Shown piece after piece: positions 2,298 to 37,887 of a stretch of DNA of 64,000 nucleotides. The stretch lies in IMG/VR virus record IMGVR_UViG_3300002835_000007, positions 1-64,000 of that record. One strand, written 5' to 3'. The notes below the pieces were generated by a model, which worked only from the letters and a program-made list of their open reading frames with translations, ran no database searches and was not told the origin of the DNA. The stretch's first letter is position 1, and each line of letters begins with the position of its first letter. The translations under genes and the position numbers were made by a program.

Positions 2298-2346
2298 CCT
2301 TGACTTTTTTGTACCTTGTCGTATATTTATTGTAAAAGATAGATAT

Positions 2347-2988
2347 ATGGCAAGAGCAGAAAAGAAAATACATTACCTATATAAAACTACTTGTTTCATA
2401 ACTGGTAGATGGTATATAGGAATGCACAGCACACATAACTTAGAAGATGGTTATATGGGTAGTGGAAAACGATTAAGGTATTCTATACGTAAGTATGGAG
2501 TTGATAATCATAAAAAAGAGATTTTAGAGTTCTTTGAGAGTAGGGAATTATTAATTGAAGCTGAAATAAAAGCAATCACTGAAGATATGGTTACAGATAA
2601 AAACTGTATGAATCTTAAATTAGGTGGCCAAGGAGGTTTTATTAATGAAGAACATAAACAAAAATTCATAAATTCAGATGGACCTAAAAATTTTGCTAAA
2701 AGGTTGATTGAGGATGAAGAATTTAGATTAAAACATTTTGCGATTATATCTGAAAGGATGAAGAAAACACATGCAAATGGTAAAATTAAATATGATACAT
2801 TCAAAGGTAAACAACATTCAGATGAAACTAAACAAAAAATGAGTGAATCATCTAAAGGTAAAGGTATTGGTGAATCAAATAGTCAATACGGTACTTGTTG
2901 GATAACCAAAGAGAGTGTTAATAAAAAAATTAAAAAAGAAGACCTTGACACATACCTAATTGAAGGATGGGTTAAAGGTAGAAGATAA
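2347..2988 (+). CDS. GIY-YIG homing endonuclease (Seg-like) with NUMOD3 motif
   Basis: YLYKTT...WYIGMHST...YMGSG; FKGKQHSDETKQKMSES; true start ATG 2347. Confidence 0.9.
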   Translation: MARAEKKIHYLYKTTCFITGRWYIGMHSTHNLEDGYMGSGKRLRYSIRKYGVDNHKKEILEFFESRELLIEAEIKAITEDMVTDKNCMNLKLGGQGGFINEEHKQKFINSDGPKNFAKRLIEDEEFRLKHFAIISERMKKTHANGKIKYDTFKGKQHSDETKQKMSESSKGKGIGESNSQYGTCWITKESVNKKIKKEDLDTYLIEGWVKGRR

Positions 2989-4074: not shown

Positions 4075-4710
4075 ATGTATTTTAAATTAGATAAATCTAA
4101 AAAAATGAAAAGAGTTTACATTGCAAAGTCCAATAAGGCGAACCCTAACTTAGTTTCAAGAGTTCGCCAAACTCTTTCCGTGTTTGATGTTCAAATCGTT
4201 GAGTTCACTGGTGGTACTTATTCACATGACTTATTATTATCGTGTGATGAGTTGTATGTCATCCCAGATTTAAGTGGTTCTTTTGATGATGATTATACTA
4301 ATATTTGGTCTGTGTCTATCGGTAAAGGTCTGTATGAACAGATACATGCGTTTCACAATAAAACATCAAATAATGATATTTTTATTGTGACCGATTTTGA
4401 TAACAATGTGGGTGTTGGTGGTTTTTATTATGAAGAAAATGATGATGATTTCTATTCAATTTATATAGAAAATGAAAATGACTATGTTGATTATGCGTAT
4501 CTAACAATTAATACAGAAAACGCAACAATAAATCCATGGGACTTATACCATTTTGTTTTAGAATCAAATGAACTTAAAGATGAATCATGGGTATCAAATG
4601 CATTGAATGAATCAATTGCTGAACATAAAACGTGGAAAGAAAAAGCAGCAAATAAAAAATTTTTATATATTGTTGCAAAAAAACTTGCAAAGTTAAAATA
4701 TAGTTTGTAA
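4075..4710 (+). CDS. hypothetical protein
   Basis: ORF track. Confidence 0.7.
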   Translation: MYFKLDKSKKMKRVYIAKSNKANPNLVSRVRQTLSVFDVQIVEFTGGTYSHDLLLSCDELYVIPDLSGSFDDDYTNIWSVSIGKGLYEQIHAFHNKTSNNDIFIVTDFDNNVGVGGFYYEENDDDFYSIYIENENDYVDYAYLTINTENATINPWDLYHFVLESNELKDESWVSNALNESIAEHKTWKEKAANKKFLYIVAKKLAKLKYSL

Positions 4711-6012: not shown

Positions 6013-6138
6013 TGGAAGGTAGCCCAATTGGTAGAGGCAGCGGAATGCAAAAAGATTAATCTGTTTTAAAGATTAAGTTCAGCAATTTAAACGCTATTTA
6101 GGAACCGAAAAGTGTTAGTTCGAATCTAACCCTTCCGA
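6013..6138 (+). ncRNA. tRNA body with ~50-nt CAGCAA module inserted in the anticodon arm
   Basis: TGGAAGG/CCTTCCG acceptor, D arm, GTTAG-TTCGAAT-CTAAC T arm; insert TTAATCT/AGATTAA hairpin + GTTCAGCAA. Confidence 0.75.
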
Positions 6139-6446
6139 CAAAAGAAGAGTGAGCAGCATTAGCCAAGTTGGAACGAGTACCAGCGTGAAGGTCAAAAATA
6201 CTCGGCTCATGACTTCTGAAAAAAAGTTTGAAAAAAACTTGCAAATGTAAAATAAAGTTAGTACATTTGTAGTATAGAAAAAGTTCTTTGAAAAGTATTA
6301 GAAATGAGGGTGTTACATTCTTAAATTTCTTTAAAAAAGTTACTAAAAAACTTGACATTTGCTTAAAAATGTCGTATATTAGTAACATAAAAATTGGATT
6401 AATTATCATAAAATAAAAAAGTAAAAAAAAAAAGAAAAAAAAGAGT

Positions 6447-7082
6447 ATGGCAACACCAAAAAGTACACCAGCAAGAAAAGCTTCTGCAAATACAGAAGTA
6501 GTTTTAGGACAAGCAGCAGCACAAATCGCTAAGGCTGTTAACGAATTAAAAGCAGCAACTGCAACAGTTTCTACTTTATCTGACCAGTCAGAGCAATTAA
6601 CTATGTTAGTAGCTAACAAAGAGGAGTCAATCGCTTCATTAGAAGTAGAGTACGCTGAGAAACGTAGACAATATGACGTTGAGTTAGAATTGTCTTTCAA
6701 AGCTAACCAAGAAAGAGTTGTAAATGAGTGGTTACGTTCAAACGGATACACATCTATTTCAACAGCTGACTTAACAACTTTACGTTCTGATTTAGAAACT
6801 TCTAGAACAAACACTGAAGCAACAGTTAAGAAAGAAGTAGCTACTGTAGCTGCAACTTTAAAATCTCAGTACGAGAATGAAATTAAATTAATTCACTCTG
6901 AGAACAAAGCTGTTGCTGCTGAAAACGCTGCAAAAATTGGTACGTTAGCAACACAAAACTCGTTCTTACAAGAACAAGTTACTAAGTTGTACGAACAATT
7001 AGATGCTGAGCGTTCTGCTGGTATCGAAAGAGCGAAAGCTGGGTCAGTAGGTTCAATTAACGTTGCACCAGCTGGTAAGTAA
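6447..7082 (+). CDS. coiled-coil hypothetical protein
   Basis: ORF track; Ala/Glu/Lys-rich heptads. Confidence 0.8.
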   Translation: MATPKSTPARKASANTEVVLGQAAAQIAKAVNELKAATATVSTLSDQSEQLTMLVANKEESIASLEVEYAEKRRQYDVELELSFKANQERVVNEWLRSNGYTSISTADLTTLRSDLETSRTNTEATVKKEVATVAATLKSQYENEIKLIHSENKAVAAENAAKIGTLATQNSFLQEQVTKLYEQLDAERSAGIERAKAGSVGSINVAPAGK

Positions 7083-7126
7083 TTAGCAATGATATTCTAC
7101 GTGGGGAACTGCGTAGAATGTTACAA

Positions 7127-7267
7127 GGGTAAAAAGATTATTTCAGCAACCAAAAATTCAAGCCTTGTTAATGCCGTGGTCGTGGGTTCGAATCCCACAC
7201 TGTCCATGATAATGGGCGGTTAGCTCAGCTGGTTAGAGCACGTATGAAAAAAAGTTAATCTTGTCCC
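7127..7267 (+). ncRNA. circularly permuted tRNA-like RNA (T arm-acceptor-D arm) closed by CAGCAA stem
   Basis: AAGATTA(7134)/TAATCTT(7256); T arm 7182-7198; ACTGTCC(7199)/GGGCGGT(7214); D arm GCTC/GAGC. Confidence 0.8.
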
Positions 7268-7296
7268 CCAAATTGGAGTCCTCTGCTCCTTAAACA

Positions 7297-7437
7297 GAGT
7301 AATTAAAAGATTGTTTCAGCAATTAAACTCAAAAATTGTATGGATAACAAGCGGTCTGGGTTCGAATCCCAGCATGTCCTAACAGAGGTGTGGGCGTGTG
7401 GTGTAATGGTAGCACAAAAAGAGCAATCTTGATACTC
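7297..7437 (+). ncRNA. second circularly permuted tRNA-like RNA closed by CAGCAA stem
   Basis: AAGATTG(7307)/CAATCTT(7424); T arm 7356-7372; CATGTCC(7373)/GGGCGTG(7392); D arm GTG-TAATGGTAG-CAC. Confidence 0.8.
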
Positions 7438-7441
7438 AAAT

Positions 7442-7519
7442 ATGGCGTTAGCTCAGCTGGTAGAGCACTGTTGGTTTTAACTGGCAGATGGGTCGTAGGT
7501 TTGAATCCTACACGCTGTA
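7442..7519 (+). pseudogene. aberrant tRNA (Lys-like loop, 7-bp anticodon stem)
   Basis: Normal D arm and GTAGG-TTTGAAT-CCTAC T arm; CTGTTGG-TTTTAA-CTGGCAG arm; weak acceptor. Confidence 0.6.
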
Positions 7520-7681
7520 CAATGTTTCTTTGTTTTATAAAACAAAGTGGTGGTAGTCTGGGGTGTTAAAACTCTCGGTCCCAAAAAAATAAGGTTGGTA
7601 ATTTACTGTAAAGCTATGGCTTCCTTCAAAAAAGTGGCACTATCGTTTGGTAGTGTCATTTTTTATTTGTACCTTTGTCAA

Positions 7682-8164
7682 ATGAAAACAAAAAGAATTA
7701 GTTTAAATTATCAATTAGGTATGATGGTAGGTGAATACATCGTAGCACTACATTTACCAACACTTAGCACAGATATGCTAAAATCTAGAACAATTATCCA
7801 AGTATCTGAAGAAGAAACTGCTGAATGGGAAACCTTAGAGAAAAAGGAAGAACCATATTGGTTTAACGACAAAAAAAGGGAAGAAGATGAAGAAGGTTAT
7901 TTGAAATCTTTTTATGATAATCGTAAATGGTATCATAAATTGGAAGAAAAATATCTACCAGAAACAATCAAAGTTCCAGTACCTAGAGTAGTACCAACCA
8001 ATATTAATAGATTTGCTGAAGGTATCAAAGATACTTTGTGGAATTGTGATATGTCACATTATAGAATTCAAGAAGGGTTTTTTGAGCAAACAGAAGACAT
8101 TGCATGGTGTTCTTATATTATTTTAACAAGACACATAGAAAAAATTCCAGAAAAGTTTGCATAA
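7682..8164 (+). CDS. hypothetical protein
   Basis: ATG 7682 after TACCTTTG promoter-like site. Confidence 0.7.
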   Translation: MKTKRISLNYQLGMMVGEYIVALHLPTLSTDMLKSRTIIQVSEEETAEWETLEKKEEPYWFNDKKREEDEEGYLKSFYDNRKWYHKLEEKYLPETIKVPVPRVVPTNINRFAEGIKDTLWNCDMSHYRIQEGFFEQTEDIAWCSYIILTRHIEKIPEKFA

Positions 8165-15883: not shown

Positions 15884-15957
15884 AATAAAAGATAGCTTCA
15901 GCAATTTCACAACTATCAAACTTTTAATTTGAATCAGAAAATGCTATCTTGATTTAT
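15884..15957 (+). ncRNA. CAGCAA-stem RNA displaying a lone Lys(UUU) anticodon hairpin
   Basis: AAGATAGC(15889)/GCTATCTT(15943), TTCAGCAA, TCAAA-CTTTTAA-TTTGA 15916-15932; own promoter TACATTTG 15867. Confidence 0.7.
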
Positions 15958-16420: not shown

Positions 16421-16428
16421 CAAAATAT

Positions 16429-16555
16429 GGGGGTGTTGAAATGTTAGATAAATCACATTCTGCCTTTTAGATTAAAGAATGTTTGCAGCAAAATCAAAAT
16501 TATTCACGCAAACTGTAAATTTGATAAAACGTTGGTGCAATTCCAGCCGCCCCCA
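16429..16555 (+). ncRNA. tRNA-like ends enclosing CAGCAA module and Tyr(GUA) anticodon hairpin
   Basis: GGGGGTG/CGCCCCC-A; ACATTCT/AGAATGT + TTGCAGCAA; CAAA-CTGTAAA-TTTG; GTTGG-TGCAATT-CCAGC. Confidence 0.7.
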
Positions 16556-16678: not shown

Positions 16679-16752
16679 GCCTTCGTAGCTCAGCTGGATA
16701 GAGCACTCCACTTTTAATGGAGGGGTCATGGGTTCGAGTCCCATCGGGGGTA
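16679..16752 (+). tRNA. tRNA-Lys(TTT)
   Basis: CTCCA-CTTTTAA-TGGAG; full cloverleaf. Confidence 0.94.
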
Positions 16753-16757
16753 CATAT

Positions 16758-16830
16758 GTACTCGTAGCTTAGTTGGTAGAGCACTCCGCTTTTAACGGAG
16801 GGGTCAAGAGTTCGAATCTCTTCGGGTACA
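16758..16830 (+). tRNA. tRNA-Lys(TTT)
   Basis: GTACTCG/CGGGTAC; CTCCG-CTTTTAA-CGGAG. Confidence 0.94.
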
Positions 16831-24113: not shown

Positions 24114-25103
24114 ATGGAAGCAAAATCAAATATTAACCCATCCGATTATGAAATCGGTGTAGTGGTTGCTAGATTCCAAGTGCATAAATTGCATGAAGGA
24201 CAAAGAAATTTACTTAACATGGTTTATAAAAACCACAAGAAAGTAATTATATTTTTAGGTGTTTCAGTAATATCTGGAACTAAGAATAATCCATTAGACT
24301 TTGCATCACGCAAAGCAATGATACAAGAAGCTTATCCTAAAGCAGTTGTATTACCACTTAAAGACAATCGCTCAGATGCTAAATGGTCACAAGTGCTTGA
24401 TGCTGAAATCAAAACACCTTATGGTGATTTATCAGCGGTATTGTATGGTAGTCGTGACTCTTTTATTCCTTATTATAGTGGTAAAAATCCAGTAATTGAA
24501 TACACAACAGATGTATTTTATTCTGGTACTGAAGTGCGTAAAGAAGTGTCAAGAGAAATATTGGCATCAGAAGACTTTAGAGCTGGTGTAATCCACGCAA
24601 CTTATGCTGCTAGACCAGTAACATATCCAACAGTAGATATCACCGTATACAACGACAAAGGACAAATCCTTATGGCTAAAAAACCAAACGAAGAGTTTTA
24701 TCGTTTTATTGGTGGGTTTGTTGATAGAACTGATGAGTCTTGGGAACAAGCAGCTAAACGTGAGTTTAAAGAAGAAACTGGTGGAAACGCTGAAATTGAC
24801 GATATTAGATATGTTTGTAGTGCTGCTATAAATGATTGGCGTTATGGTAAAACAGAGTCTGGTATTATGACAACACTTTTCATTGGTAAGTTCTTATGGG
24901 GACGTATTGAACCATCTGATGATATTGCATCATTGCATTGGATAAACCCATCTGACGTTTATAGTAGTGAAATCATGCCAGAACACCAAGAGTTATTTGA
25001 ATCTTTGACACGTTTTTTACATAGAACTGAATTAATCAGTAAAAACACTGGTGAAGGTAAAATAAAAGAAGCAAAAGCTAAATACGGAGAAAGTATCGCA
25101 TGA
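24114..25103 (+). CDS. nadM: bifunctional NMN adenylyltransferase / Nudix ADP-ribose pyrophosphatase
   Basis: ARFQVHKLHEGQ, NPLDF..R, SGTEVR; Nudix box GGFVD...AAKREFKEETG. Confidence 0.92.
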   Translation: MEAKSNINPSDYEIGVVVARFQVHKLHEGQRNLLNMVYKNHKKVIIFLGVSVISGTKNNPLDFASRKAMIQEAYPKAVVLPLKDNRSDAKWSQVLDAEIKTPYGDLSAVLYGSRDSFIPYYSGKNPVIEYTTDVFYSGTEVRKEVSREILASEDFRAGVIHATYAARPVTYPTVDITVYNDKGQILMAKKPNEEFYRFIGGFVDRTDESWEQAAKREFKEETGGNAEIDDIRYVCSAAINDWRYGKTESGIMTTLFIGKFLWGRIEPSDDIASLHWINPSDVYSSEIMPEHQELFESLTRFLHRTELISKNTGEGKIKEAKAKYGESIA

Positions 25104-25438
25104 AATTAGCAGTAATTGGTAGCAGAGGTTTTAATGACTATGAGTTGGTTAAAGAAACTTTAAAACATCATACAATAACATTATTGGTTAGTGGTGGTGC
25201 GAAAGGTGCTGATTCATTGGGTGAAAGATATGCAAATGAAAATAACATTCAAACACTTATCTTTAAACCAGATTGGAAGAAACATGGACCAGCAGCTGGT
25301 CCACTTAGAAATACCGATATTGTTAACAATGCCGATACTATCATAGCATTTTGGGATGGTGAAAGTAAAGGAACCAAAGATAGTATCACAAAAGCTGAAA
25401 AATTAGGAAAAAATATAATAATAATAAATACAAAATAG
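25100..25438 (+). CDS. SLOG-family protein (DUF2493/YspA-like)
   Basis: IGSRGF, VSGGAKGAD, AGPLRN, AFWDGESKGT. Confidence 0.88.
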   Translation: MKLAVIGSRGFNDYELVKETLKHHTITLLVSGGAKGADSLGERYANENNIQTLIFKPDWKKHGPAAGPLRNTDIVNNADTIIAFWDGESKGTKDSITKAEKLGKNIIIINTK

Positions 25439-25439
25439 T

Positions 25440-27059
25440 ATGCAATCAGAAACTAGAAGATTAAAAAGAAGTTTAGCACTTAAAGAAGTGATTAAAACTA
25501 GATTGGCAGAAGCAATTAAAAACAAAGATTGGTCTTCAATCGAAACATTAGAAGGTCTTATCACAAAAGTATTGGATAAACCTAACAACCTTGTACTTAT
25601 GGGTGATGCGTATAAATACTCACACCATAAATTCTATGAGGATAACACAACAACAGTTTATTCATACATGGAGTCACGTGGTGGTCGTTTCCAAGAAACT
25701 GTATGGTATGGTCTTGAAATGTTCATTAAAGAATATTTAGAAGGTGTTGCAATCACACAAGAAGAATTAGATGAAGCATATGAGTACTTAGGTACTAAAC
25801 ATGGTGTATTTGGTCGTGATGATGTGTTTGATAAATCTAAATTCCAATACATTATAGATGTTCATGGTGGTAAACTACCAGTACGTATTAAAGCAGTACA
25901 AGAAGGTACAGTTGTAGGTGTTAAAAACGTTCTTATGACTATTGAGAACACTGACCCTAATTGTTATTGGTTAACTAACTTTTTAGAAACAATCATGATG
26001 CAATTATGGTATCCAATTACGGTTGCAACATTGTCACGTGAAGTTAAGAAAATTGTTATCGAATACTACCAAAAAACATCTGCGTTACCACAACACATTA
26101 TGGATACAGTTATTGAGTTCGTATTAAACGATTTCGGTTTTAGAGGTGTATCATCAGTACAATCAGCTGGTTACGGTGGTTCAGCACACTTAATTAATTT
26201 TATGGGTTCTGACACAACAGTTGCATCAAAACGTATCTGTGAATACTATAATACTGACACAATATTTGGTTTATCAGTTCCAGCAACTGAACACTCTATC
26301 ATGACAATGAAAGGTGAAGAAGGTGAAGTTGAAATGATGAGAAGAACACTTGAGAAATACCCTACTGGAATTGTAGCGTGTGTATCTGACTCTTACCACA
26401 TCTTACGTGCATGTTCTGAGAAATGGGGAACTGAGTTACGTGATTTGATTTTATCAAGACCATCAGAACCTGGAAATCAACTGGTTATTCGTCCAGATAG
26501 TGGTCACGTTGTCAACACATTAAAAGAAGTGTTTGCTATATTGTTTGATAAATTTGGTTACACTGTGAATGATAAAGGGTTCAAATTGTTACCACCACAA
26601 GTTCGTGTAATTCAAGGTGATGGTGTAAACATCAATTCAATTCGTGAGATTTACGAAGAATTATACAGATTAGGTATTTCTGCTGAGAACATCGTGTTTG
26701 GTATGGGTGGTAAATTGTTACAAGCTGATATTAATAGAGATACACAAAACTTTGCAACTAAAGCATGTTTCGCTGTCGTAAATGGTGAACAACGTGATTT
26801 GGTTAAATCACCAACAGAAGTTGATGAAAATGGTGAATTAAAACCATCATTCAAGAAATCTAAACAAGGTCGTTTGAAGTTGGTTAAACACTATACAAAT
26901 GGTCAATACTACACTGTAACATCATTGGAAGATGGATATGAATCTGCACATGATGAATTGAGAACTATTTTTGAAGATGGTAAACTATTGGTTGAAACGA
27001 AGTTTGAAGATATTCGTAGTAGAGCTAAAATTTTTAAATTAAACGTAGAATTAGTATAA
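25440..27059 (+). CDS. nadV: nicotinamide phosphoribosyltransferase
   Basis: DAYKYSH, DFGFRG, SVPATEHS, VSDSY, IRPDSG, IQGDG, FGMGG. Confidence 0.95.
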   Translation: MQSETRRLKRSLALKEVIKTRLAEAIKNKDWSSIETLEGLITKVLDKPNNLVLMGDAYKYSHHKFYEDNTTTVYSYMESRGGRFQETVWYGLEMFIKEYLEGVAITQEELDEAYEYLGTKHGVFGRDDVFDKSKFQYIIDVHGGKLPVRIKAVQEGTVVGVKNVLMTIENTDPNCYWLTNFLETIMMQLWYPITVATLSREVKKIVIEYYQKTSALPQHIMDTVIEFVLNDFGFRGVSSVQSAGYGGSAHLINFMGSDTTVASKRICEYYNTDTIFGLSVPATEHSIMTMKGEEGEVEMMRRTLEKYPTGIVACVSDSYHILRACSEKWGTELRDLILSRPSEPGNQLVIRPDSGHVVNTLKEVFAILFDKFGYTVNDKGFKLLPPQVRVIQGDGVNINSIREIYEELYRLGISAENIVFGMGGKLLQADINRDTQNFATKACFAVVNGEQRDLVKSPTEVDENGELKPSFKKSKQGRLKLVKHYTNGQYYTVTSLEDGYESAHDELRTIFEDGKLLVETKFEDIRSRAKIFKLNVELV

Positions 27060-27547
27060 TGACAACAGATAAATTTATATTCTTTTGGGGAGGGACATAC
27101 AGTCAATGGTGTCCTTCCACATTTGAAATCGGAGGTGTAAAATATAATTGCTGCGAGCAATATATGATGGCACAAAAAGCATTATTATTCAATGACATAG
27201 AAAGTCACAAGATGATTATGTATGCTACTAGTCCACGTGACCAAAAAGCATTTGGACGTAGAGTAAAAGGGTTTGACAAAGACAAATGGGAAGCTGTTTG
27301 TAGAGAAATCGTTTACGATGCAAACTATGCCAAGTTTACTCAAAACCCATCTATGATGGCTGAGTTACTGGCAACTGGTGATAGAGAAATTGTAGAAGCT
27401 AGTCCAGAGGATAAAATCTGGGGAATTGGATTGCATGAAAACGATGCTAGAGTTCACGACAAGTCAAAATGGCAAGGAACCAATTGGTTAGGTGAAGCTA
27501 TCATGCAAGTAAGAGAAAAATTAAGAACTATTAAAATAGAAATGTAA
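27059..27547 (+). CDS. NADAR (YbiA-like) protein
   Basis: SQW, EQYMMAQKA, KFTQN, EASPEDKIWGIG, GTNWLG. Confidence 0.93.
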   Translation: MTTDKFIFFWGGTYSQWCPSTFEIGGVKYNCCEQYMMAQKALLFNDIESHKMIMYATSPRDQKAFGRRVKGFDKDKWEAVCREIVYDANYAKFTQNPSMMAELLATGDREIVEASPEDKIWGIGLHENDARVHDKSKWQGTNWLGEAIMQVREKLRTIKIEM

Positions 27548-28005
27548 TGATTAGATACGTAGAAGGCGATTTAGTGAAAATGGCCAAAGAAGGAGAATTC
27601 GATGTAATAGCACACGGTTGTAACTGTTTCTGTGCTATGGGTGCTGGTATTGCACCACAAATTAAAAATGCTTTTCCAGAAGCATATGAGGCTGATTGTG
27701 CAACAGTGGCTGGTGATGAATCAAAAATGGGTACTATTACTCATACGGTTAATTCTACACCGATAGTTGTAAACATTTATTCTCAATATGACACCAAAGG
27801 TAGACGTAGTGGTAACATGGATTTAGACTATGATGCTTTACGTTCTGGTTTAAAAGAGATGAAAGCTAAATTTTCTGGTAAAACAATTGGGTTACCGATG
27901 ATTGGTGCTGGATTGGCTGGTGGTGATTGGGATATCATTGAGAAAATAATTGAAGAAGAAATGATTGGTGAGTATGTAACAATCGTTCAATACGTTCCAT
28001 GGTAA
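27547..28005 (+). CDS. Macro domain protein
   Basis: GDL, HGCNCFCAMGAGIA, PMIGAGLAGGDW. Confidence 0.93.
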   Translation: MIRYVEGDLVKMAKEGEFDVIAHGCNCFCAMGAGIAPQIKNAFPEAYEADCATVAGDESKMGTITHTVNSTPIVVNIYSQYDTKGRRSGNMDLDYDALRSGLKEMKAKFSGKTIGLPMIGAGLAGGDWDIIEKIIEEEMIGEYVTIVQYVPW

Positions 28006-28586
28006 TAATCTTTGTTAATAATCCAATGCAAGATGCAAACACTCTTGAACCGCAATTAATTGATGGTAGAGTAGTTTATTGGACTGTGGTTAGTGAGTGT
28101 ATGAAATCAAATGAAACATTCAAAGAATGGTTGGTTAGAAAGGAAGAAAGAATCAATACACATCCTAATTATAGTTCCATTGAAGGTCTTTTAATCTATG
28201 ACATGCAACCAATTGTGTCTACCCCTTACGAAGGGGTGACACATGGTGGTATGATTATTAGGTATGCTTTTTTAAAGAAAAAAGAAGAAAACATTTGATT
28301 TTTAATTTATTTTTAGTACATTTGTAACATGAAAATAGTTTTTGAAAATTTAGAAGAAGCGTTAAAAATACCATCTTCAGCATACACAATTAGAACTGAA
28401 ACTCTTAAAGTTGAAGAGACTTTATTAGAGTGGATGAATAGAAAGAATGAAATGTTATTAAATGACCCTAGATACGCTAACGTTGAAGGTGTTATTTTAT
28501 ATGACGTTGAGTCGTATTTTGATTCACCATACAAAGATAAGGTACATAGTGGGTTAATCCTAAAATATAAGTATTTAAGAAAATGA
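27999..28586 (+). CDS. two tandem paralogous hypothetical proteins (27999-28298, 28329-28586)
   Basis: Shared ET..EW..RK......P.Y..(I/V)EG...YD......PY....H.G pattern. Confidence 0.7.
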
Positions 28587-29056
28587 AAGTAATATTTTTA
28601 GATATTGATGGAGTATTAGCAACAACATCTTGTTATGGTAAAGGAAAAAACAACAAGTGGGGTGCTTATATGTTTGACCAAAAAGCTGTTGTTTATCTCA
28701 ATTTTATACTTAGTGAGACTGGTGCTGAAATCATTTTATCATCTGATTGGCGAAATCAATATACTTTGCATGAAATGCGTGAAATTTTTTGTCATAACGG
28801 AGTGTTGAAAGGTCCGATAGGGTTTACACCATCGTTAAAAACATATAAGGGTGATAATCTTGAAGGTGGTCGTGCTGATGAAATAAATGCATGGTTAGAA
28901 ATTAACGCATGGAAGAATGATATCAAATGGGTTGCCATTGATGATTTGAATATGGATGAATGGTTGTACCCTAACTTTGTTCATTGTCCTAATGAACATG
29001 AAGGAATCAAAAAACAAAACATAAAAGATAAAATAATACAAATATTAAATGGATAA
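28583..29056 (+). CDS. HAD-family protein (Swiss-Army-Knife RNA repair-like)
   Basis: FLDIDGVL, LSSDWR, R..EI..WL, AIDD. Confidence 0.85.
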   Translation: MKVIFLDIDGVLATTSCYGKGKNNKWGAYMFDQKAVVYLNFILSETGAEIILSSDWRNQYTLHEMREIFCHNGVLKGPIGFTPSLKTYKGDNLEGGRADEINAWLEINAWKNDIKWVAIDDLNMDEWLYPNFVHCPNEHEGIKKQNIKDKIIQILNG

Positions 29057-29483
29057 TTGGGATAAGAAGTTCATCAAGTTGTGTCAACACATTGCTGAAT
29101 GGAGCAAGGATAAAAATAAAAAAGTTGGTGCTGTAATAGTTGATAATGACAATGTAGTTATATCAATGGGTTATAATGGAATACCAAGAGGTTGTGATGA
29201 TACTGAAGAGTGTCGTTATGAAAGACCAACAAAATATTTGTTCACAGAGCATGCTGAACGAAATGCAATATACCATGCAGCAAGACATGGTGTATCATTG
29301 AAAGATTGTAAAATGTATGTAACTTTGTTCCCATGTGCTGATTGTGCAAGAGCAATGATTCAATCTGGAATAACAAAAATAATAGCACCAGAACCAAATT
29401 TAGACCACGAAGTATGGGGTGTACACTTCAAGGCTGCGATTCAAATGATGGAGGAAGCTAATATCGAAATAATTTTAATTTAA
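29049..29483 (+). CDS. dCMP deaminase
   Basis: GYNG, HAERNAI, PCADC. Confidence 0.93.
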   Translation: MDNWDKKFIKLCQHIAEWSKDKNKKVGAVIVDNDNVVISMGYNGIPRGCDDTEECRYERPTKYLFTEHAERNAIYHAARHGVSLKDCKMYVTLFPCADCARAMIQSGITKIIAPEPNLDHEVWGVHFKAAIQMMEEANIEIILI

Positions 29484-29662
29484 TGGAAACAGTTAAAGTA
29501 GGCTTGGCCAATGTTGGTGAAAAATTAATGCCAGTTGATATTGTCATCAAATGGATGCCAACTGATATTGTATATGCTGGTGATACAGTGTTTTTTAAAA
29601 ATGAAAAGTCCTATTATTCAATGAATTATATGGACTTTATGAGAATATTTAATTTATAAAAT

Positions 29663-30106
29663 ATGAGTATAGTAAGGTCAATAAAAATTAATCATTATGA
29701 ACACATGGTTAATAGAAATTGGGATAAAACATATTGGGCGTTTGACATCCATGGTACAATCCTAAAACCAAATTACGAGTATGGAAACATACCTAAAGAG
29801 TTTTACCCATTTGCTAAAGAAACACTTCAGTTTATTAGCAAGATGGAAGATGTTGTAATGATTCTTTACACATGTTCACATCCACATGAGATTGAACAAT
29901 ATATTGAGTATTTCAAAGAGAATGATATTCATTTTGATTACATAAATGAAAACCCAGAGATAGCTACAAACCTAGAAGGTTATGGTAACTACGATAAAAA
30001 ACCTTACATGAATGTATTATTTGAAGACAAAGCTGGATTCGATGGTGACAGTGATTGGGATAGTGTTTTATGGTTATTAACTAGTAAAAATGGCGAGAAT
30101 ATCTGA
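29663..30106 (+). CDS. HAD-like hydrolase
   Basis: AFDIHGTI, LYTCS, INENPE, FEDKAG. Confidence 0.75.
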   Translation: MSIVRSIKINHYEHMVNRNWDKTYWAFDIHGTILKPNYEYGNIPKEFYPFAKETLQFISKMEDVVMILYTCSHPHEIEQYIEYFKENDIHFDYINENPEIATNLEGYGNYDKKPYMNVLFEDKAGFDGDSDWDSVLWLLTSKNGENI

Positions 30107-30448
30107 CATACAAAGATACAATAAAGGTAGAAAAGATTTAACTAGGGATAATGCCGATTTTGAAACATTAAGGTTTAAAAATGAAAATGGTGATGTTATG
30201 GTTATTAAACCACAAGAGGTTAGAGAAGTTTTACATGATTTTATTGATAGTGAGATAGGTTTTTTGGGTGATGCAATGAAAACTCAAATAAAAGAAAGAT
30301 TAGAGTTCAAAATTAAACAAGTTGAAAGAACTTTAATTGAACATTTAGATGATAAAATAAATAAAATTGCAGAATCAATATTAGAAAAAACTATTGATAG
30401 AATAGCAGAAGAAGAAATAAATAGAAGGGTTTTAGAAAAAATTAAAAA

Positions 30449-30766
30449 ATGTTTATGAAAAGAAGAAGAAGAATTGGTTTAATTATTTTTGCAATTGTAA
30501 TTGCAATATTTTTGTTAAGTAGTTGTGCCGACACATCACATGTTAAACAATGTTTACCACCAACAGAACACACTTATGGTTTCTGGGGTGGTACATGGCA
30601 TGGTATGATAACAGTTCCATCATTTATTGGTAGTCTTATTTGGGACGATGTTGCTGTATACGCAGTAAATAATAATGGTGGATGGTATGATTTTGGATTT
30701 GTAGGTGGATTATTTTTCATGCTAAAATTAGTTGGGATTGGTAATAAAAAAGTTAAAGAAAAATGA
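30449..30766 (+). CDS. putative lipoprotein/membrane protein
   Basis: LLSSC lipobox; GFWGGTWHG...NNGGWYDFGF. Confidence 0.7.
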   Translation: MFMKRRRRIGLIIFAIVIAIFLLSSCADTSHVKQCLPPTEHTYGFWGGTWHGMITVPSFIGSLIWDDVAVYAVNNNGGWYDFGFVGGLFFMLKLVGIGNKKVKEK

Positions 30767-31527
30767 AAAAGAAAGTAGTAGTATTTAGTGGTGCTGGATT
30801 AGATAGAGAATCTGGTATCTTAACGTTTCGTGACTCTAAAGATGGGTTATGGAACAATTATAAAGTTGATGAAGTTGCGACAAAAGAAGGATGGTCTAAA
30901 AACCGTGAAAAAGTTTTGGCGTTTTACAACGAAAGACGTAGAGAATTACCTAGTGTTGAACCAAACGATGCTCACAGAGCATTGGTGCGTTTAGAAGAAG
31001 GATATAGTGTATTAAACGTGACGCAAAACGTAACTGATTTGTTAGAACGTGCTGGTGCAAGTGATATTATTCATTTACATGGTGAGTTAACCAAAGCAAG
31101 AGGTTGCTTCCATAAATCAGAAGGTTTTGACACTAATTACATTGTTAAAGAAATTGGTTATAACGACATTAACATCGGTGATAAATGTGAACATACTGAT
31201 TCACAATTAAGACCACATGTTTGTTGGTTTGGTGAATGGCCTTATGACACAGATAGAGCTTATGATGAAGTTCCATTTGCAGACATTCTTATCATTGTTG
31301 GTACAAGTTTAGAGATAACTTATACGTTATCAATGTTAGGTCAATTAAGACATAAAGTTTTAAGTGGTGAATGTGAAGTTTATTATGTTGACCCAAATCC
31401 ATCAACTCACATGGAAGCTTATGGGATTAAACCTAATTACATTAGAAAAGTTGCTAGTGAAGGGTTAAATGAATTAGTTGACGAATTATTAAAAAGAGAA
31501 GAAAATCAAAAAAATATTGCTAATTAA
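30763..31527 (+). CDS. Sir2/CobB NAD-dependent deacylase
   Basis: SGAGL..ESG..TFR, TQNV.DL.ERAG, HLHG, LRPHV.WFGE, GTSL. Confidence 0.93.
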   Translation: MKKKVVVFSGAGLDRESGILTFRDSKDGLWNNYKVDEVATKEGWSKNREKVLAFYNERRRELPSVEPNDAHRALVRLEEGYSVLNVTQNVTDLLERAGASDIIHLHGELTKARGCFHKSEGFDTNYIVKEIGYNDINIGDKCEHTDSQLRPHVCWFGEWPYDTDRAYDEVPFADILIIVGTSLEITYTLSMLGQLRHKVLSGECEVYYVDPNPSTHMEAYGIKPNYIRKVASEGLNELVDELLKREENQKNIAN

Positions 31528-31569
31528 TAATTTATTTAGTATATTTGAATTAATAAAATAAAAATAGAT

Positions 31570-31941
31570 ATGGAATATTACACGTTTGAAGGAGTTATCA
31601 AAGAGATTTTTGATACTCAAGAATTTAAAAACAATTTCAAGAAAAGAGAAGTTGTATTAGAAACAGAAGAGGATTATCCTCAATTAATAAAATTTGAGTT
31701 TACCGATGAAAATGGTATTAACAAATTAGATGACCATGCTGCTGGTGAAAAAGTTAAGATTGCTTTCTTACTAAAAGGTAGTGAATGGCAAGGTAAATAT
31801 TTTACTAATTTAAGAGGTGTTGCAATTGCTTCATCAGAAGAACCAACTTCTACTGATAAACCTAAAAAAGACACTAAGAAAGATGTTTTGTCTTCAATGA
31901 CAAAAGTTAACAATAACGAAGAAGATGAATTACCATTCTAA
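31570..31941 (+). CDS. DUF3127 OB-fold protein (SSB-like)
   Basis: FKKREVVL..YPQ..FEF...G.EW.GKYF; acidic EDELPF tail. Confidence 0.85.
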   Translation: MEYYTFEGVIKEIFDTQEFKNNFKKREVVLETEEDYPQLIKFEFTDENGINKLDDHAAGEKVKIAFLLKGSEWQGKYFTNLRGVAIASSEEPTSTDKPKKDTKKDVLSSMTKVNNNEEDELPF

Positions 31942-32557
31942 TCATGAGTGTAGTTAAATTTGAATTGAAAGAAGAACACGTAAAGTTGTTAAAATATTTA
32001 CGTTGGAGTAAATCAAAAGAACTTATTGTTAATATTTCTGATGATGAAGATTCTGTTCCATTTGGTTTTGATACTATCTATGAAGCAATAGATACAATAT
32101 TAAACGGTAAACCAGAAGGGTTTGACCCATTTGAAGCAGATGATGTTATTGAATATAGTGATGAACAAAAAGCTGAATGGGATAAATTATATGATGAGTT
32201 GCCAACAGCATTAGATGTCATATTACATAATCAATCATTTGATTTGGGGCGTTATAAGACCAAGTATCATGACAGAAACTGGAAAAAGATGAATTAATTT
32301 TCATCTTTTTTTGTTTATATGAAATATTATTCATACATTTGTAGAAACTAAAAAATAAATAAATATGAAAAATGTAAAAAGTTACTGTATCATAAAGAAA
32401 GTGGTACAATCAAATGGGAAAACATTAAACGTGCTAATGTTAGATATTAACACTGAAGTATTGGAATTCGATAATTTACAAGATGCTGAAAAATTTGCTG
32501 CATTGATGACACAAAACTCTGACTCTGGTTGGGAATACATCGTAAAAGAAATATAAT

Positions 32558-33604
32558 ATGAATCAATCGTTATTATTTACCTTAGATGGTAAAACAGAAT
32601 TGGCTGAAGCCATTATTGACTCTGCTAATTTATTTAGCACGGAACATGAAATTAGTTTAGGTTATTTAAACAAACAAAAATTCTCCGATGGTGAGTTATG
32701 TGTTGATTTCACTGACTCAGTTAGAGGTAAATCAGTGTTTTTGTTATCTAGTCCAAACACATCAGATGCAATCATCAACTTAGCATTGGCTATTGATGCT
32801 GCAAAACGTGGTGGTGCTAAAGAGATTATACCTATCTTACCATATTTCCCATATGCTAGACAAGATAAGAAAGACCAAAGCAGAGGACCAATTGGTGCTA
32901 AGGTTATGGCTGAAATTATTGAACAACGTGGTGCAACATCAGTAATCACTTTTGATTTACACGCTGACCAGATACAAGGGTTCTTTAATATACCAGTTAC
33001 ACACATTGAAGGTAAGCATGTTTTCGACAGTTACATCAACGATACTATCAAAAACTTTACTGGTGGTGAAGTTGTATTGTGTGGACCAGATGCTGGTTCT
33101 GGTAAACGTGTTAAACGTATGCGTGACCAAATCAATAAAAGATATGGTGTTAACCTAAACATTGTCATGATTGACAAAACTAGGAAAAAAGCCAACGTGA
33201 TTGATGAAATGATTATTATTGGTGATGTTAAAGGTAAACATGTTATCATATTGGATGATATGGTTGATACTGCTGGTACGTTATGTAAAGCTGCTGAAGT
33301 ATTGAAAGATGCTGGTGCGTTGACTGTAAGGGCGATAATTGCACATGGTGTGTTATCTGGGCCAGCAGTTGAACGAATTGGTGAAAGTAAATTAGCTGAA
33401 TTAGTAATAAGTGATTCATTACCAATGAAAGATGCTAAAGAATTATGTCATAAAGAATTTAATGAAACAAAATGTCATCATATTATAAAAGGGTGCGAGA
33501 AAACAACTGTTATTAGTGTAGCACAACAAATTGGGATGGGAGTTTCTGCATCAATCAATAAACTAAGCTACGAAGCATTAAAATCAATTAAAGCAGTATA
33601 TTAA
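32558..33604 (+). CDS. prs: ribose-phosphate pyrophosphokinase
   Basis: FSDGE, PYFPYARQDK, DLHADQIQGFF, PDAG, DDMVDTAGT, HGVLSG. Confidence 0.93.
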   Translation: MNQSLLFTLDGKTELAEAIIDSANLFSTEHEISLGYLNKQKFSDGELCVDFTDSVRGKSVFLLSSPNTSDAIINLALAIDAAKRGGAKEIIPILPYFPYARQDKKDQSRGPIGAKVMAEIIEQRGATSVITFDLHADQIQGFFNIPVTHIEGKHVFDSYINDTIKNFTGGEVVLCGPDAGSGKRVKRMRDQINKRYGVNLNIVMIDKTRKKANVIDEMIIIGDVKGKHVIILDDMVDTAGTLCKAAEVLKDAGALTVRAIIAHGVLSGPAVERIGESKLAELVISDSLPMKDAKELCHKEFNETKCHHIIKGCEKTTVISVAQQIGMGVSASINKLSYEALKSIKAVY

Positions 33605-37434: not shown

Positions 37435-37887
37435 ATGATTAAAACAATAGCAGCTGGTGTATTTATTATTAATAAAAATAATAAAGTATTGATTTGTCAC
37501 CCAACAAATCATAAACCAAATACATGGAGCATACCAAAAGGTAAGATTGAAGCATTAGAAACTTTTGCTGAAGCTTGTATAAGAGAAACTTTTGAAGAAA
37601 CAAACATAGATTTATCAGATTATAAAGATAAATTGATTATGTTGGATAGTGTGAACTATTCACATAAAAAGAAAATGTTAATTCCTTTTGTTTTATTTGA
37701 GAATGATTGTGAGTTATTAGATTTAACTATGGTAACTTTACAATGTAACTCAAATGTTCCAGAAGATAGAGGTGGATTTCCAGAAATGGATGGTTATGAT
37801 TGGGTTACAATTGATGAAGCAAGAAAACTATTACATCCAACACAAGTTGCATGTTTAGATAAGGTTAAACAATTATTTTCAAGATGA
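37435..37887 (+). CDS. Nudix hydrolase
   Basis: WSIPKG...ACIRETFEETN; FPEMD. Confidence 0.9.
   Translation: MIKTIAAGVFIINKNNKVLICHPTNHKPNTWSIPKGKIEALETFAEACIRETFEETNIDLSDYKDKLIMLDSVNYSHKKKMLIPFVLFENDCELLDLTMVTLQCNSNVPEDRGGFPEMDGYDWVTIDEARKLLHPTQVACLDKVKQLFSR

What the first reader, a model, noticed from the sequence alone, without database searches (positions are those of the whole stretch)
7127..7437. Two tandem circularly permuted tRNA-like RNAs closed by a conserved CAGCAA stem (Y-RNA/YrlA-like architecture)
Seen in sequence: in each unit the tRNA 3' half (T arm with GGTTCGAATCC, then acceptor strand) comes before the 5' half (acceptor strand, D arm). The acceptor stems pair fully (ACTGTCC/GGGCGGT; CATGTCC/GGGCGTG) but are closed by 8- and 12-nt loops, so they cannot be charged unless processed. 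The ends pair as AAGATTA/TAATCTT and AAGATTG/CAATCTT (compensatory change), each followed by TTTCAGCAA, with an outer stem beyond an internal loop. Established knowledge: bacterial YrlA Y RNAs have a terminal Ro60-binding stem plus a T-acceptor-D permuted tRNA domain. Inference: these are a Y-RNA-like family with a different protein-binding motif, tRNA decoys, or permuted tRNA genes. No Ro60/TROVE gene is visible in the window.
Basis: partly seen in the sequence, partly recalled or inferred. Interest (0 to 1): 0.88.

Follow-up and report, generated by a model that had tools for sequence, protein, structure and literature searches.

The report
Permuted, capped tRNA mimics in phage
Two adjacent ~150-nt genes in a large uncultured phage encode RNAs that fold like complete tRNAs, except that the amino-acid-accepting end is sealed by a loop and the RNA's own ends leave through an extra conserved stem; they belong to a conserved RNA family found only in phage-like DNA, matching no catalogued family, with an unknown partner.

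Summary
Window 7120-7276 and 7292-7444 (+) are two homologous structured RNAs.

- **Order of parts:** outer stem, inner stem AAGAUUN/NAAUCUU, invariant UUUCAGCAA, a short anticodon-like hairpin, T arm, 7-bp acceptor stem closed by a loop, D arm, then back to the stems.
- **Family size:** a covariance model built from unit-1 homologs finds 56 distinct family sequences in viral and metagenome contigs.
- **Covariation:** 97-98% of cells are paired against about 75% when shuffled and 32-48% when slid; 23 of 29 pairs show double changes. The tertiary 15:48 pair also covaries.
- **Complete tRNA body:** removing the stem module in silico makes ARAGORN call a full tRNA (Asn-GUU for unit 1).
- **Not YrlA:** 39 bits against a gathering score of 69, no GNCGAAN0-1G Ro60 motif, and no TROVE gene in the window.
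- **Not likely decoding tRNAs:** some caps are UUCG or GNRA tetraloops, the discriminator base is not conserved, and the anticodon-like triplets differ between orthologs.
- **Other topologies:** the same stem and UUCAGCA module occurs unpermuted inside tRNA-like genes and in a mini form.

Best reading: a new family of non-chargeable tRNA mimics, restricted to phage-like contigs, with a Y-RNA-like modular design, acting as decoy or scaffold. The mechanism is inferred.

The parts
7120..7276 (+). Unit 1, whole RNA as matched by the family covariance model
   Evidence: R1 scores it at 169.6 bits, E 1e-34. Homologs are aligned in A1, A4 and A6.
7127..7129 (+). Unit 1 outer stem, 5' strand (GGG). 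It pairs with 7265-7267 across an internal loop: UAAA 7130-7133 on one side, GU 7263-7264 on the other.
   Evidence: All 3 modelled pairs show double changes, e.g. UAGACA/UGUCUA, UAGGUA/UACCUA, AAAGGA/UCCUUU.
7134..7140 (+). Unit 1 inner stem, 5' strand AAGAUUA. It pairs with UAAUCUU 7256-7262.
   Evidence: Paired in 98-99% of cells. Variants are AAGCUUA/UAAGCUU and AAGAUUG/CAAUCUU.
7141..7149 (+). Conserved single-stranded motif UUUCAGCAA in unit 1. It faces the A-rich linker 7243-7255.
   Evidence: Identical in 54 of the 55 parsed family sequences; the exception is UUCAGCAU. Most members were fetched by a pattern containing the motif, so this invariance is partly built in.
7162..7176 (+). 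Unit 1 anticodon-arm mimic: GCC, 7-nt loop UUGUUAA, UGC, then CG pairing with CG 7241-7242 (tRNA positions 27-28/42-43)
   Evidence: The 3-bp hairpin covaries: AGC/GCU, AGG/CCU, GCU/AGC. Joining position 28 to 29 in silico gives tRNA-Asn(gtt) by ARAGORN.
7182..7198 (+). Unit 1 T arm: GUGGG, UUCGAAU, CCCAC
   Evidence: 4 of 5 pairs show double changes.
7199..7220 (+). Unit 1 capped acceptor stem: ACUGUCC, cap AUGAUAAU, GGGCGGU
   Evidence: All 7 pairs show double changes. Caps are 4-16 nt and include UUCG, cUUCGg and cGUAAg.
7223..7239 (+). Unit 1 D arm: GCUC, AGCUGGUUA, GAGC
   Evidence: GG is present in the D loop in 52 of 52 sequences. The 15:48 pair is G:C in 28 and A:U in 20 of 52.
7256..7267 (+). 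Unit 1 3' strands: inner stem UAAUCUU, then GU, then outer stem CCC
7280..7299 (+). Spacer hairpin CCUCUG...CAGAG between the units. CCUCUG is also complementary to the unit 2 cap box CAGAGG (7383-7388).
   Evidence: Three co-varying versions exist in relatives. Which of the two pairings forms is undecided.
7292..7444 (+). Unit 2, whole RNA as matched by the model built from unit-1 homologs
   Evidence: 74.3 bits, E 5e-14.
7297..7322 (+). Unit 2 5' module: outer stem GAGUA, loop AUUAA, inner stem AAGAUUG, motif UUUCAGCAA
   Evidence: Outer stem variants are GAGCA/UGCUC and GAGAA/UUCUC.
7336..7350 (+). Unit 2 anticodon-arm mimic: UUGU, loop AUGGAUA, ACAA
   Evidence: Among the aligned unit-2 orthologs the stem is constant except in one diverged member (L138), while the loop triplet varies: GGA, AGA, GGU, GUA, UUA.
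7356..7415 (+). Unit 2 T arm (7356-7372), capped acceptor (CAUGUCC 7373-7379, cap 7380-7391, GGGCGUG 7392-7398), and D arm (7401-7415)
   Evidence: The MFE fold recovers all three helices. The cap box NAGAGGU is conserved.
7424..7437 (+). Unit 2 3' strands: inner stem CAAUCUU, then GA, then outer stem UACUC
6013..6138 (+). Related tRNA-like gene with an open acceptor end. It carries the same module unpermuted: hairpin 6056-6062 / 6070-6076 with loop GUUUUAA, followed by AG-UUCAGCAA 6077-6085.
   Evidence: Rfam tRNA scores 34 bits with a 61-nt insert. In homologs the hairpin covaries (UAAUCU/AGAUUA against UAACUU/AAGUUA), as does the anticodon stem (GCGGU/ACCGC against GCAGU/ACUGC). Fold.
15885..15952 (+). 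Related mini element: AAGAUAGC, UUCAGCAA, linker, anticodon-stem-loop mimic UCAAA-CUUUUAA-UUUGA, then GCUAUCUU. It has no T, acceptor or D arms.
   Evidence: The ortholog at L214:10666 keeps the stems and the loop while the linkers differ.

Best explanation
Each unit is a roughly 150-nt non-coding RNA made by a large uncultured phage. It is a circularly permuted but otherwise complete tRNA body.

Shown:
- The T arm, 7-bp acceptor stem, D arm and a short anticodon-like hairpin with a 7-nt loop are all present and covary.
- The tRNA elbow signature is present: GG in the D loop, a UUCGAAU T loop, and a covarying 15:48 pair.
- The acceptor end is closed by a loop. In some relatives that loop is a UUCG or GNRA tetraloop.
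- The RNA's 5' and 3' ends leave the body beside the anticodon stem, at about tRNA position 28/29 in unit 1 and 26/27 in unit 2.
- The ends leave through a conserved module: a 7-bp stem AAGAUUN/NAAUCUU, an internal loop, a covarying outer stem, and the motif UUUCAGCAA facing an A-rich strand.
- The same module occurs in unpermuted tRNA-like genes and in a mini form that keeps only an anticodon-stem-loop mimic.

Inferred:
- The RNAs are transcribed on the + strand, probably together with ORF 6447-7082.
- They are released at the outer stem and fold into an L shape that tRNA-recognising proteins can bind.
- They cannot be aminoacylated.
- They work as tRNA mimics with a Y-RNA-like two-module logic. 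The tRNA-like body and its variable anticodon-like loop engage a tRNA-binding enzyme. The most likely target is a tRNA-directed nuclease or modifier used in host defence, which the RNA titrates as a decoy. The invariant stem/UUUCAGCAA module binds a second factor or provides stability and processing.
For: Structure:
- RNAalifold on 16 unit-1 homologs recovers all six helices; 16 of 29 pairs have compensatory changes.
- On 25 and 45 distinct model-aligned sequences, 96.7% and 97.8% of cells pair. Shuffled controls give 74.6% and 76.3%; slid controls give 32-48%. 23 of 29 pairs show double changes, and 0 of 500 shuffles reach the observed value on any measure.
- A parse with fixed tRNA offsets, not fitted to pairing, gives the same helices.
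- The 15:48 tertiary pair is G:C in 28 and A:U in 20 of 52 sequences.
- Rejoining position 28 to 29 in silico yields ARAGORN tRNA calls.

The cap is selected closure:
- Caps include UUCG, cUUCGg, cGUAAg and helix-extending versions.

Module:
- UUUCAGCAA is invariant, and the module recurs in other topologies with covarying stems.

Loop variability on a constant body.

Distribution:
- The family occurs in IMG/VR contigs of 16-369 kb and in metagenome contigs.
- The 11 matches of the one exact pattern in 185,579 reference genomes have no closing stem and look like chance.
- GenBank phages hold none.

Context:
- The units sit among tRNA genes, next to a tRNA with an aberrant anticodon loop in every relative.
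- The window also encodes HAD domains of RNA-repair proteins, NAMPT, NADAR, Macro, SIR2, Nudix and an RNase R-like protein.
- The literature shows tRNAs are frequent targets of anti-phage defence and that phage tRNAs evade it through anticodon-loop changes (PMC10264068, PMC11555353).
Against: - There are no expression data and no mapped RNA ends.
- No partner protein has been identified.
- The decoy or scaffold function is an inference from architecture and genomic context only.
- The conserved module has no assigned role. A simple decoy would not obviously need it.
- Invariance of UUUCAGCAA is partly built in, because most members were fetched with a pattern containing it. Two members found by the model alone deviate: L145 has UUCAGCAU, and L018 unit 1 lacks the motif.
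- MFE z-scores are weak.
- A Ro60 gene elsewhere in the 206-kb genome has not been excluded.
Confidence: 0.5

Rival explanations
1. These are true Y RNAs of the YrlA type. The stem module binds a Ro60/Rsr ortholog encoded elsewhere in the phage or by the host, and the tRNA-like domain tethers it to an exoribonuclease, as in the Rsr-Y RNA-PNPase machine.
For: - The topology matches YrlA, and Rfam YrlA is the best non-tRNA hit at 39.3 bits (41.2 bits in L138).
- A conserved motif sits on the 5' strand of the terminal stem, where YrlA carries its Ro60 motif (PMC4201824).
- The window encodes an RNase II/R-type exoribonuclease at 42488-44473.
Against: - The score is below the gathering score of 69, and the cmscan alignment does not use the real terminal stem.
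- GNCGAAN0-1G is absent from all 56 sequences.
- None of the 50 window ORFs scanned has a TROVE or vWA domain, including every ORF within 4 kb.
- The 526-aa ORF without a Pfam hit is a phrog_1745 'DNA transfer protein'.
- YrlA has no anticodon hairpin; these RNAs do.
Confidence: 0.1
2. These are genuine permuted or split tRNA genes. The cap is opened by RNase P and 3' processing, CCA is added, and a two-piece or re-ligated tRNA decodes Asn, Lys and similar codons. This would supply tRNAs such as tRNA-Asn that the phage otherwise lacks.
For: - Rejoining in silico gives complete cloverleaves with canonical 7-nt anticodon loops; unit 1 becomes Asn-GUU.
- No tRNA-Asn was found in the window or in any related locus.
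- G3:U70 is present in 36 of 56 sequences.
Against: - Caps include the stable tetraloops UUCG and GUAA and helix extensions.
- The base at the discriminator position is U, A, C or G with no conservation, even among GUU-loop members.
- The anticodon-like triplet switches between orthologs (Asn, Lys, Arg; Ser, Tyr, Phe) while the acceptor stays the same.
- Unit 2 'Ser' has no long variable arm.
- By inspection there is no bulge-helix-bulge motif at the ends. The stem is 7 bp with a 4-5/2-nt internal loop.
- A large extra helix leaving the anticodon stem would be expected to clash in the ribosome (my inference).
Confidence: 0.12
3. These are cis-acting processing or stability elements of a polycistronic transcript. 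tRNA-like punctuation plus a double-stranded stalk would be cut by RNase P, Z or III, or would protect the upstream mRNA's 3' end. There is no function in trans.
For: - The units lie between ORF 6447-7082 and a tRNA, with no separate promoter-like site directly upstream. The nearest is at 6352-6380.
- The arrangement of outer stem, internal loop and inner stem resembles RNase III processing stalks (my knowledge).
- The mini element sits at the start of a tRNA operon, downstream of a TTG...TAcaTTTG promoter-like sequence.
Against: - Full tRNA tertiary signatures, a covarying anticodon-like hairpin and an invariant 9-nt motif are far more than punctuation needs.
- Two different units are kept in tandem across many relatives.
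- The module also sits inside tRNA-like bodies, where cutting it would destroy them.
Confidence: 0.13
4. These are decayed remnants of tandem tRNA genes: the 3' half of one gene next to the 5' half of the next, with no function.
For: - Tandem tRNAs give partial hits to the same models, e.g. window 16708-16784 at 52 bits covering model positions 43-124 only.
- In L018 the unit-1 position is occupied by an intact tRNA-Arg plus a 5' half.
Against: - Acceptor strands covary within a unit, not between neighbours. All 7 pairs show double changes.
- The terminal stems covary.
- The family is conserved in phages whose neighbouring proteins are only 45-65% identical.
Confidence: 0.02

Closest known systems
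YrlA (Y RNA-like, Rfam RF02553) of bacteria and mycobacteriophages
   Same: - Both have a permuted T arm / loop-capped acceptor stem / D arm domain with tRNA tertiary signatures, including the G15:C48 or A15:U48 alternative.
- Both are closed by a stem formed by the RNA's 5' and 3' ends, with a conserved motif on the 5' strand.
- Both are often present in more than one copy.
- Both occur in phages.
   Different: - This family has no GNCGAAN0-1G motif and no adjacent Ro60/TROVE gene.
- It scores 39-41 bits against a gathering score of 69.
- It has an extra anticodon-like hairpin, so the whole cloverleaf is present.
- Its module is different: AAGAUUN stem plus UUUCAGCAA.
- The module also occurs in unpermuted and mini forms.
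Circularly permuted tRNA genes (Cyanidioschyzon merolae, some Archaea)
   Same: - The 3' half is encoded upstream of the 5' half.
- The acceptor strands are joined by an intervening loop.
- The leader and trailer pair with each other.
- The same flanking structure appears as an insertion in unpermuted relatives.
   Different: - No bulge-helix-bulge motif.
- The setting is bacterial-type phage.
- Some caps are stable tetraloops.
- The discriminator and the anticodon are not conserved, so maturation to a decoding tRNA is unlikely.
Two-piece (permuted) tmRNA
   Same: - The T arm and 3' acceptor strand precede the 5' acceptor strand.
- G3:U70 is present in both window units.
   Different: - No tag reading frame and no pseudoknots.
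- A full D arm is present.
- Rfam tmRNA_permuted scores 14.6 bits against a gathering score of 47.
- G3:U70 is found in only 36 of 56 members.
Phage tRNAs with altered anticodon loops that evade tRNA-targeting defences (PMC10264068; PMC11555353)
   Same: - Encoded in phage tRNA clusters.
- Variation is concentrated in the anticodon loop.
- Aberrant-loop tRNAs lie right next to the units.
   Different: Those are ordinary chargeable tRNAs. These RNAs are capped, permuted, and carry an extra conserved module.

Membership tests
YrlA / bacterial Y RNA (RF02553) | Reaches the Rfam gathering score (69 bits) | tested here: not met
   Unit 1 scores 39.3 bits, unit 2 18.1 bits, and the L138 homolog 41.2 bits. 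Nothing reaches the gathering threshold.
YrlA / bacterial Y RNA (RF02553) | tRNA-like domain in the order T arm, capped acceptor-like stem, D arm | tested here: met
YrlA / bacterial Y RNA (RF02553) | GNCGAAN0-1G motif near the 5' end, the proposed Ro60/Rsr contact (PMC4201824) | tested here: not met
   A regular-expression search finds it in 0 of 56 family sequences.
YrlA / bacterial Y RNA (RF02553) | Encoded within about 4 kb of a Ro60 (TROVE) gene on the same strand (PMC4201824) | tested here: not met
   Pfam scans of 50 window ORFs, including all ORFs between 3745 and 12122, find no TROVE or vWA domain. The rest of the 206-kb contig was not available.
YrlA / bacterial Y RNA (RF02553) | Bound by Ro60/Rsr in vivo | not testable with these tools
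   Needs immunoprecipitation.
Canonical tRNA gene (RF00005) | Contiguous cloverleaf with an open acceptor end and a discriminator base | tested here: not met
   ARAGORN and Rfam tRNA call nothing in 7127-7437. The acceptor is capped and the discriminator position is not conserved.
Canonical tRNA gene (RF00005) | All four arms plus the elbow signature (G18G19, T loop, 15:48 pair) | tested here: met
   ARAGORN calls a tRNA after in-silico rejoining.
Permuted tRNA genes (algal/archaeal type) | 3' half upstream of 5' half, with an intervening sequence between the acceptor strands | tested here: met
Permuted tRNA genes (algal/archaeal type) | Bulge-helix-bulge motif formed by leader and trailer | tested here: not met
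   By inspection of the covarying structure: a 7-bp stem flanked by a 4-5/2-nt internal loop, with no pattern of 3-nt bulge, 4-bp helix, 3-nt bulge.
Permuted tRNA genes (algal/archaeal type) | Matures into a chargeable tRNA with a fixed identity | tested here: inconclusive
   Sequence argues against it: tetraloop caps, a variable discriminator, and switching anticodon-like triplets. Maturation itself cannot be tested here.
Two-piece tmRNA (RF04321) | Tag reading frame with pseudoknots; Rfam gathering score 47 | tested here: not met
   14.6 bits. No short tag frame: the reading frames opened from GCA run through the T arm without a stop (read).

The most novel reading that the evidence does not exclude
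These RNAs are a phage counter-defence of a new kind: non-chargeable, nuclease-resistant tRNA decoys. They display a rapidly changing anticodon stem-loop on a constant tRNA body, or in the mini form on the stem module alone. Their job would be to soak up or mis-trigger host tRNA-targeting immune nucleases. The invariant UUUCAGCAA module would recruit a phage factor. A still bolder reading, less likely but not excluded: they are the first permuted or split tRNA genes outside eukaryotes and archaea, opened by RNase P to give two-piece tRNAs.
Probability: 0.3. Interest if true: 0.9.

Novelty: new variant of a known kind. Interest (0 to 1): 0.72.

Why it matters
- tRNA mimicry by capped, permuted RNAs has so far been tied to Ro60 and its YrlA partners. 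This family shows the same design evolved, or was kept, without the Ro60 motif or a nearby Ro60 gene, in a clade of large uncultured phages with a different invariant module.
- It gives a clean entry point to the open question of what the tRNA-like domain of such RNAs does.
- It may reveal an RNA-based layer in the conflict over tRNAs between phages and bacterial immunity.
- The family is well defined: a covariance model, 56 variants, and coexisting permuted, unpermuted and mini forms. It could be added to RNA family databases and tested directly.

Tried and rejected
- **Antisense regulation by the motif.** Its complement TTGCTGAA occurs 8 times on the mRNA strand, but always in phase as xTT-GCT-GAA. 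A synonymous-codon shuffle gives 3.8 +/- 1.7, with 10 of 300 shuffles reaching 8. Codon usage explains most of it, so I dropped the idea.
- **GenBank phages.** Megablast found nothing. Distant blastn found only tRNA similarity.
- **Nearest deposited relative by protein.** LR756500.1 (462 kb, 60% identity) has neither tRNAs nor the RNA in the 41 kb around the match.
- **Reference bacterial and archaeal genomes.** The 11 pattern matches all lack the closing stem, so they are chance.
- **The loose pattern AAGNTTNTTTCAGCAA.** It returned mostly chance matches.
- **More distant phage relatives.** L177 and L180, at 56-60% identity for the upstream ORF, lack the RNA.
- **Other permuted T-acceptor-D matches in unrelated viral contigs.** L001, L003, L005, L008, L014 and L016 are tandem tRNAs or other elements and do not reach YrlA.
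- **Window ORF 35449-37029 (526 aa, no Pfam hit) as a hidden Ro60.** No PDB relative; PHROGs assigns it to phrog_1745, 'DNA transfer protein'.
- **TTCAGCAA at 41243 and 45145.** The 41243 site lies in what reads as coding sequence and the 45145 site lies inside listed ORF 44512-45315; I treated both as chance.
- **Unit 2 cap as a Shine-Dalgarno site for ORF 7390-7569.** Rejected because relatives differ by indels that are not multiples of three.

Full report
**Setting.** The window is low in G+C (28-35%) and all long ORFs lie on the + strand. It carries 19 ARAGORN tRNAs.

Its genes are typical of large phages:
- GP88, a Gp23-like fragment and a phrog_1745 DNA transfer protein
- NAMPT, PRPP synthetase, two Nudix proteins, NADAR, Macro and SIR2
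- two HAD domains of 'Swiss Army Knife' RNA-repair proteins
- an RNase II/R-type enzyme, IF3 and two sigma factors

By coordinates the window is the first 64 kb of IMG/VR contig UViG_3300002835_000007, which is 205,931 bp. Sequences of the form TTG...TAnnTTTG upstream of genes suggest a Bacteroidota host. That is my inference from known promoter consensus, read.

**The observation.** ARAGORN and Rfam tRNA call nothing between 7127 and 7437.
- A permissive Rfam scan gives YrlA as the only substantial non-tRNA hit: unit 1 at 39.3 bits, E 1.5e-6 for 2.4 kb, against a gathering score of 69. Unit 2 scores 18.1 bits.
- In that alignment the T arm, acceptor and D arm fit, but the model's Ro60 stem is placed on unrelated bases, not on AAGAUUA/UAAUCUU.
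- MFE folding alone is not persuasive for unit 1 (z -1.0). For unit 2 (z -2.6) it recovers the terminal stem, T arm, acceptor and D arm.

**Homologs.** Pattern scans of IMG/VR found the same architecture in many contigs of 16-369 kb, often as the same tandem pair.
- The one metagenome scan added more; the model matched 50 places in 51 loci.
- Flanking proteins are 45-100% identical to the window's. The RNA usually follows the homolog of ORF 6447-7082 (phrog_9325, unknown function).
- Relatives at 56-60% identity for that ORF lack the RNA.
- The same pattern in 185,579 reference genomes gave 11 matches, none with a closing stem.
- GenBank phages have no homolog.

So the family is restricted, as far as these collections show, to one clade of large uncultured phages.

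**Structure.** RNAalifold on 16 unit-1 homologs recovers six helices: outer stem, inner stem, a 3-bp hairpin with a 7-nt loop, T arm, 7-bp acceptor and D arm. Sixteen of 29 pairs have compensatory changes.
- The covariance model R1, built from these sequences, scores unit 2 at 74 bits although no unit-2 sequence was used to build it.
- On the model alignments, 96.7% of cells pair across 25 distinct sequences and 97.8% across 45. Shuffled controls give 74.6% and 76.3%; partners slid by 1-3 columns give 32-48%. Twenty-three of 29 pairs show changes on both sides.
- Those alignments are fitted to the model, so I also parsed every sequence with fixed tRNA offsets from the T loop and D arm. The same pairings appear.
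- The tertiary 15:48 pair is G:C in 28 and A:U in 20 of 52 sequences, and GG is in every D loop.

This argues for a tRNA-like three-dimensional fold and excludes decayed gene fragments.

Just 5' of the variable loop there is an anticodon-arm mimic.
- In unit 1 the CG after the D arm pairs with the CG before the variable loop (positions 27-28/42-43). The next three pairs come from the upstream strand: AGC/GCU, AGG/CCU or GCU/AGC. They close a loop of the form CUNUUAA.
- If the module is removed in silico by joining position 28 to 29, ARAGORN calls unit 1 a tRNA-Asn(gtt). Relatives come out as Asn, Lys(ctt, ttt) or Arg(cct). Unit 2 comes out as 'Ser(gga)', Tyr(gta) or Phe(gaa).

The whole cloverleaf is therefore present, and the RNA's ends leave beside the anticodon stem.

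**The module in other topologies.**
- The tRNA-like gene at 6013-6138 has an open acceptor end. It carries a 7-bp hairpin followed by AG-UUCAGCAA as a 61-nt insert. In relatives both the hairpin and the anticodon stem covary.
- At 15885-15952 a mini element has the stem AAGAUAGC/GCUAUCUU, UUCAGCAA, and only an anticodon-stem-loop mimic (UCAAA-CUUUUAA-UUUGA). An ortholog keeps exactly these parts.
- A metagenome relative (L219:505) has the module plus an anticodon-like hairpin plus a T arm only.

The constant elements across all forms are the stem, UUCAGCA and an anticodon-like loop.

**Are these decoding tRNAs?** Probably not.
- Unit-1 caps range from 4 to 16 nt. They include UUCG, cUUCGg, cGUAAg and versions that extend the helix. 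This looks like selection for closure.
- The base after the acceptor 3' strand is U, A, C or G without pattern.
- Anticodon-like triplets change between orthologs while the acceptor stays the same.
- There is no bulge-helix-bulge motif.

Points in favour of a decoding role are the absence of any tRNA-Asn in the sampled loci and the 7-bp acceptor. That is the length at which M. smegmatis YrlA is cut by RNase P and receives CCA (PMC4201824).

**Is it YrlA?** It works like one on paper but fails membership.
- The score is below threshold.
- GNCGAAN0-1G is found in none of the 56 sequences.
- No TROVE domain appears in the 50 ORFs scanned, including all ORFs within 4 kb.

**Most likely function (inferred).** A non-chargeable tRNA mimic with two modules.
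- The L-shaped body and its variable loop would engage a tRNA-recognising protein.
- The invariant module would bind a second factor or confer processing and stability.
- The setting points to the conflict over tRNAs. Every relative has an aberrant-loop tRNA immediately downstream, and the window holds RNA-repair and NAD/ADP-ribose genes. Published work shows many defence systems cut tRNAs and that phage tRNAs escape through loop changes (PMC10264068, PMC11555353).

I found no paper describing this family.

**Verdict.** This is a real, conserved, previously uncatalogued RNA family. It is a new variant of the capped, permuted tRNA-mimic design known from YrlA. Its mechanism is unproven.

Noticed in passing
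window 7442-7520 (+); L002:4180-4258 and 4601-4672; L004:437-509; L149:192-269; L053:184-255: The tRNA directly downstream of the units has a non-canonical anticodon loop in every relative. ARAGORN reports 'ttta' in the window (stem of up to 7 bp with loop UUUUAA), and 'ttat', 'ttcg', 'tg' or Tyr(ata) elsewhere. L002 also has a tRNA-Stop(tta). These could be suppressor, quadruplet-reading or defence-evading tRNAs.
   Followed up: partly
window 6013-6138 (+): A tRNA-like gene with a 61-nt insert that is the same stem and UUCAGCAA module in unpermuted form. It is conserved with covariation in L002, L006, L007, L017 and L044.
   Followed up: yes
window 15885-15952 (+); L214:10640-10730: A mini element consisting of the module plus a Lys-type anticodon-stem-loop mimic. 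It lies just downstream of a TTG...TAcaTTTG promoter-like sequence and upstream of tRNA-Tyr.
   Followed up: partly
window 16427-16553 (+): A possible further tRNA-like RNA. It has an acceptor GGGGGUG/CGCCCCC, a T-arm-like GUUGG-UGCAAUU-CCAGC, and the hairpin ACAUUCU/AGAAUGU followed by UUGCAGCAA. ARAGORN does not call it, and the family model gives only a weak hit (25.7 bits).
   Followed up: partly
window 7280-7299 and 7383-7388: The unit 2 cap box NAGAGG is conserved, unlike the unit 1 caps. It is complementary to the spacer CCUCUN upstream of unit 2, and three co-varying versions exist in relatives. The same spacer can also form a hairpin with NAGAG at unit 2's 5' flank, so this may be alternative pairing or a pseudoknot.
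   Followed up: partly
window units 1 and 2, acceptor stems: G3:U70, the alanine identity pair that is also found in tmRNA, is present in both window units and in 36 of 56 family members, even though the acceptor end is capped.
   Followed up: partly
window 24114-33604, 37435-37887: A dense set of NAD/ADP-ribose genes: Nudix, NAMPT, NADAR, Macro, HAD_SAK_2, SIR2, PRPP synthetase and a second Nudix. This is suggestive of counter-defence against NAD-depleting or ADP-ribosylating systems.
   Followed up: no
window 41312-41842 and 42488-44473: A stand-alone HAD_SAK_1 RNA-repair domain protein sits next to an RNase II/R-type exoribonuclease (RNB, CSD and S1 domains). A phage-encoded IF3 is at 39787-40284.
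   Followed up: no
window 2302-2988 (+): A GIY-YIG/NUMOD3 homing-endonuclease-like ORF lies among the tRNA genes. Its homologs sit at different places, sometimes twice, in related loci (L139-L142, L150), as expected for a mobile gene.
   Followed up: partly
window 57298-57331 (+): An Rfam DUF805b RNA motif just reaches its gathering score (35.8 against 35.6). It lies upstream of the SPFH/Band 7 ORF 57366-58148.
   Followed up: no
window 7520-7680 (+): A conserved non-coding stretch follows the odd tRNA. By eye it has a 10-bp palindromic hairpin at about 7528-7551 and a terminator-like hairpin with a U run at about 7637-7672. Parts are conserved in L002, L004, L007, L017, L138 and L140. The listed ORF 7547-8164 probably starts at ATG 7682.
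   Followed up: partly
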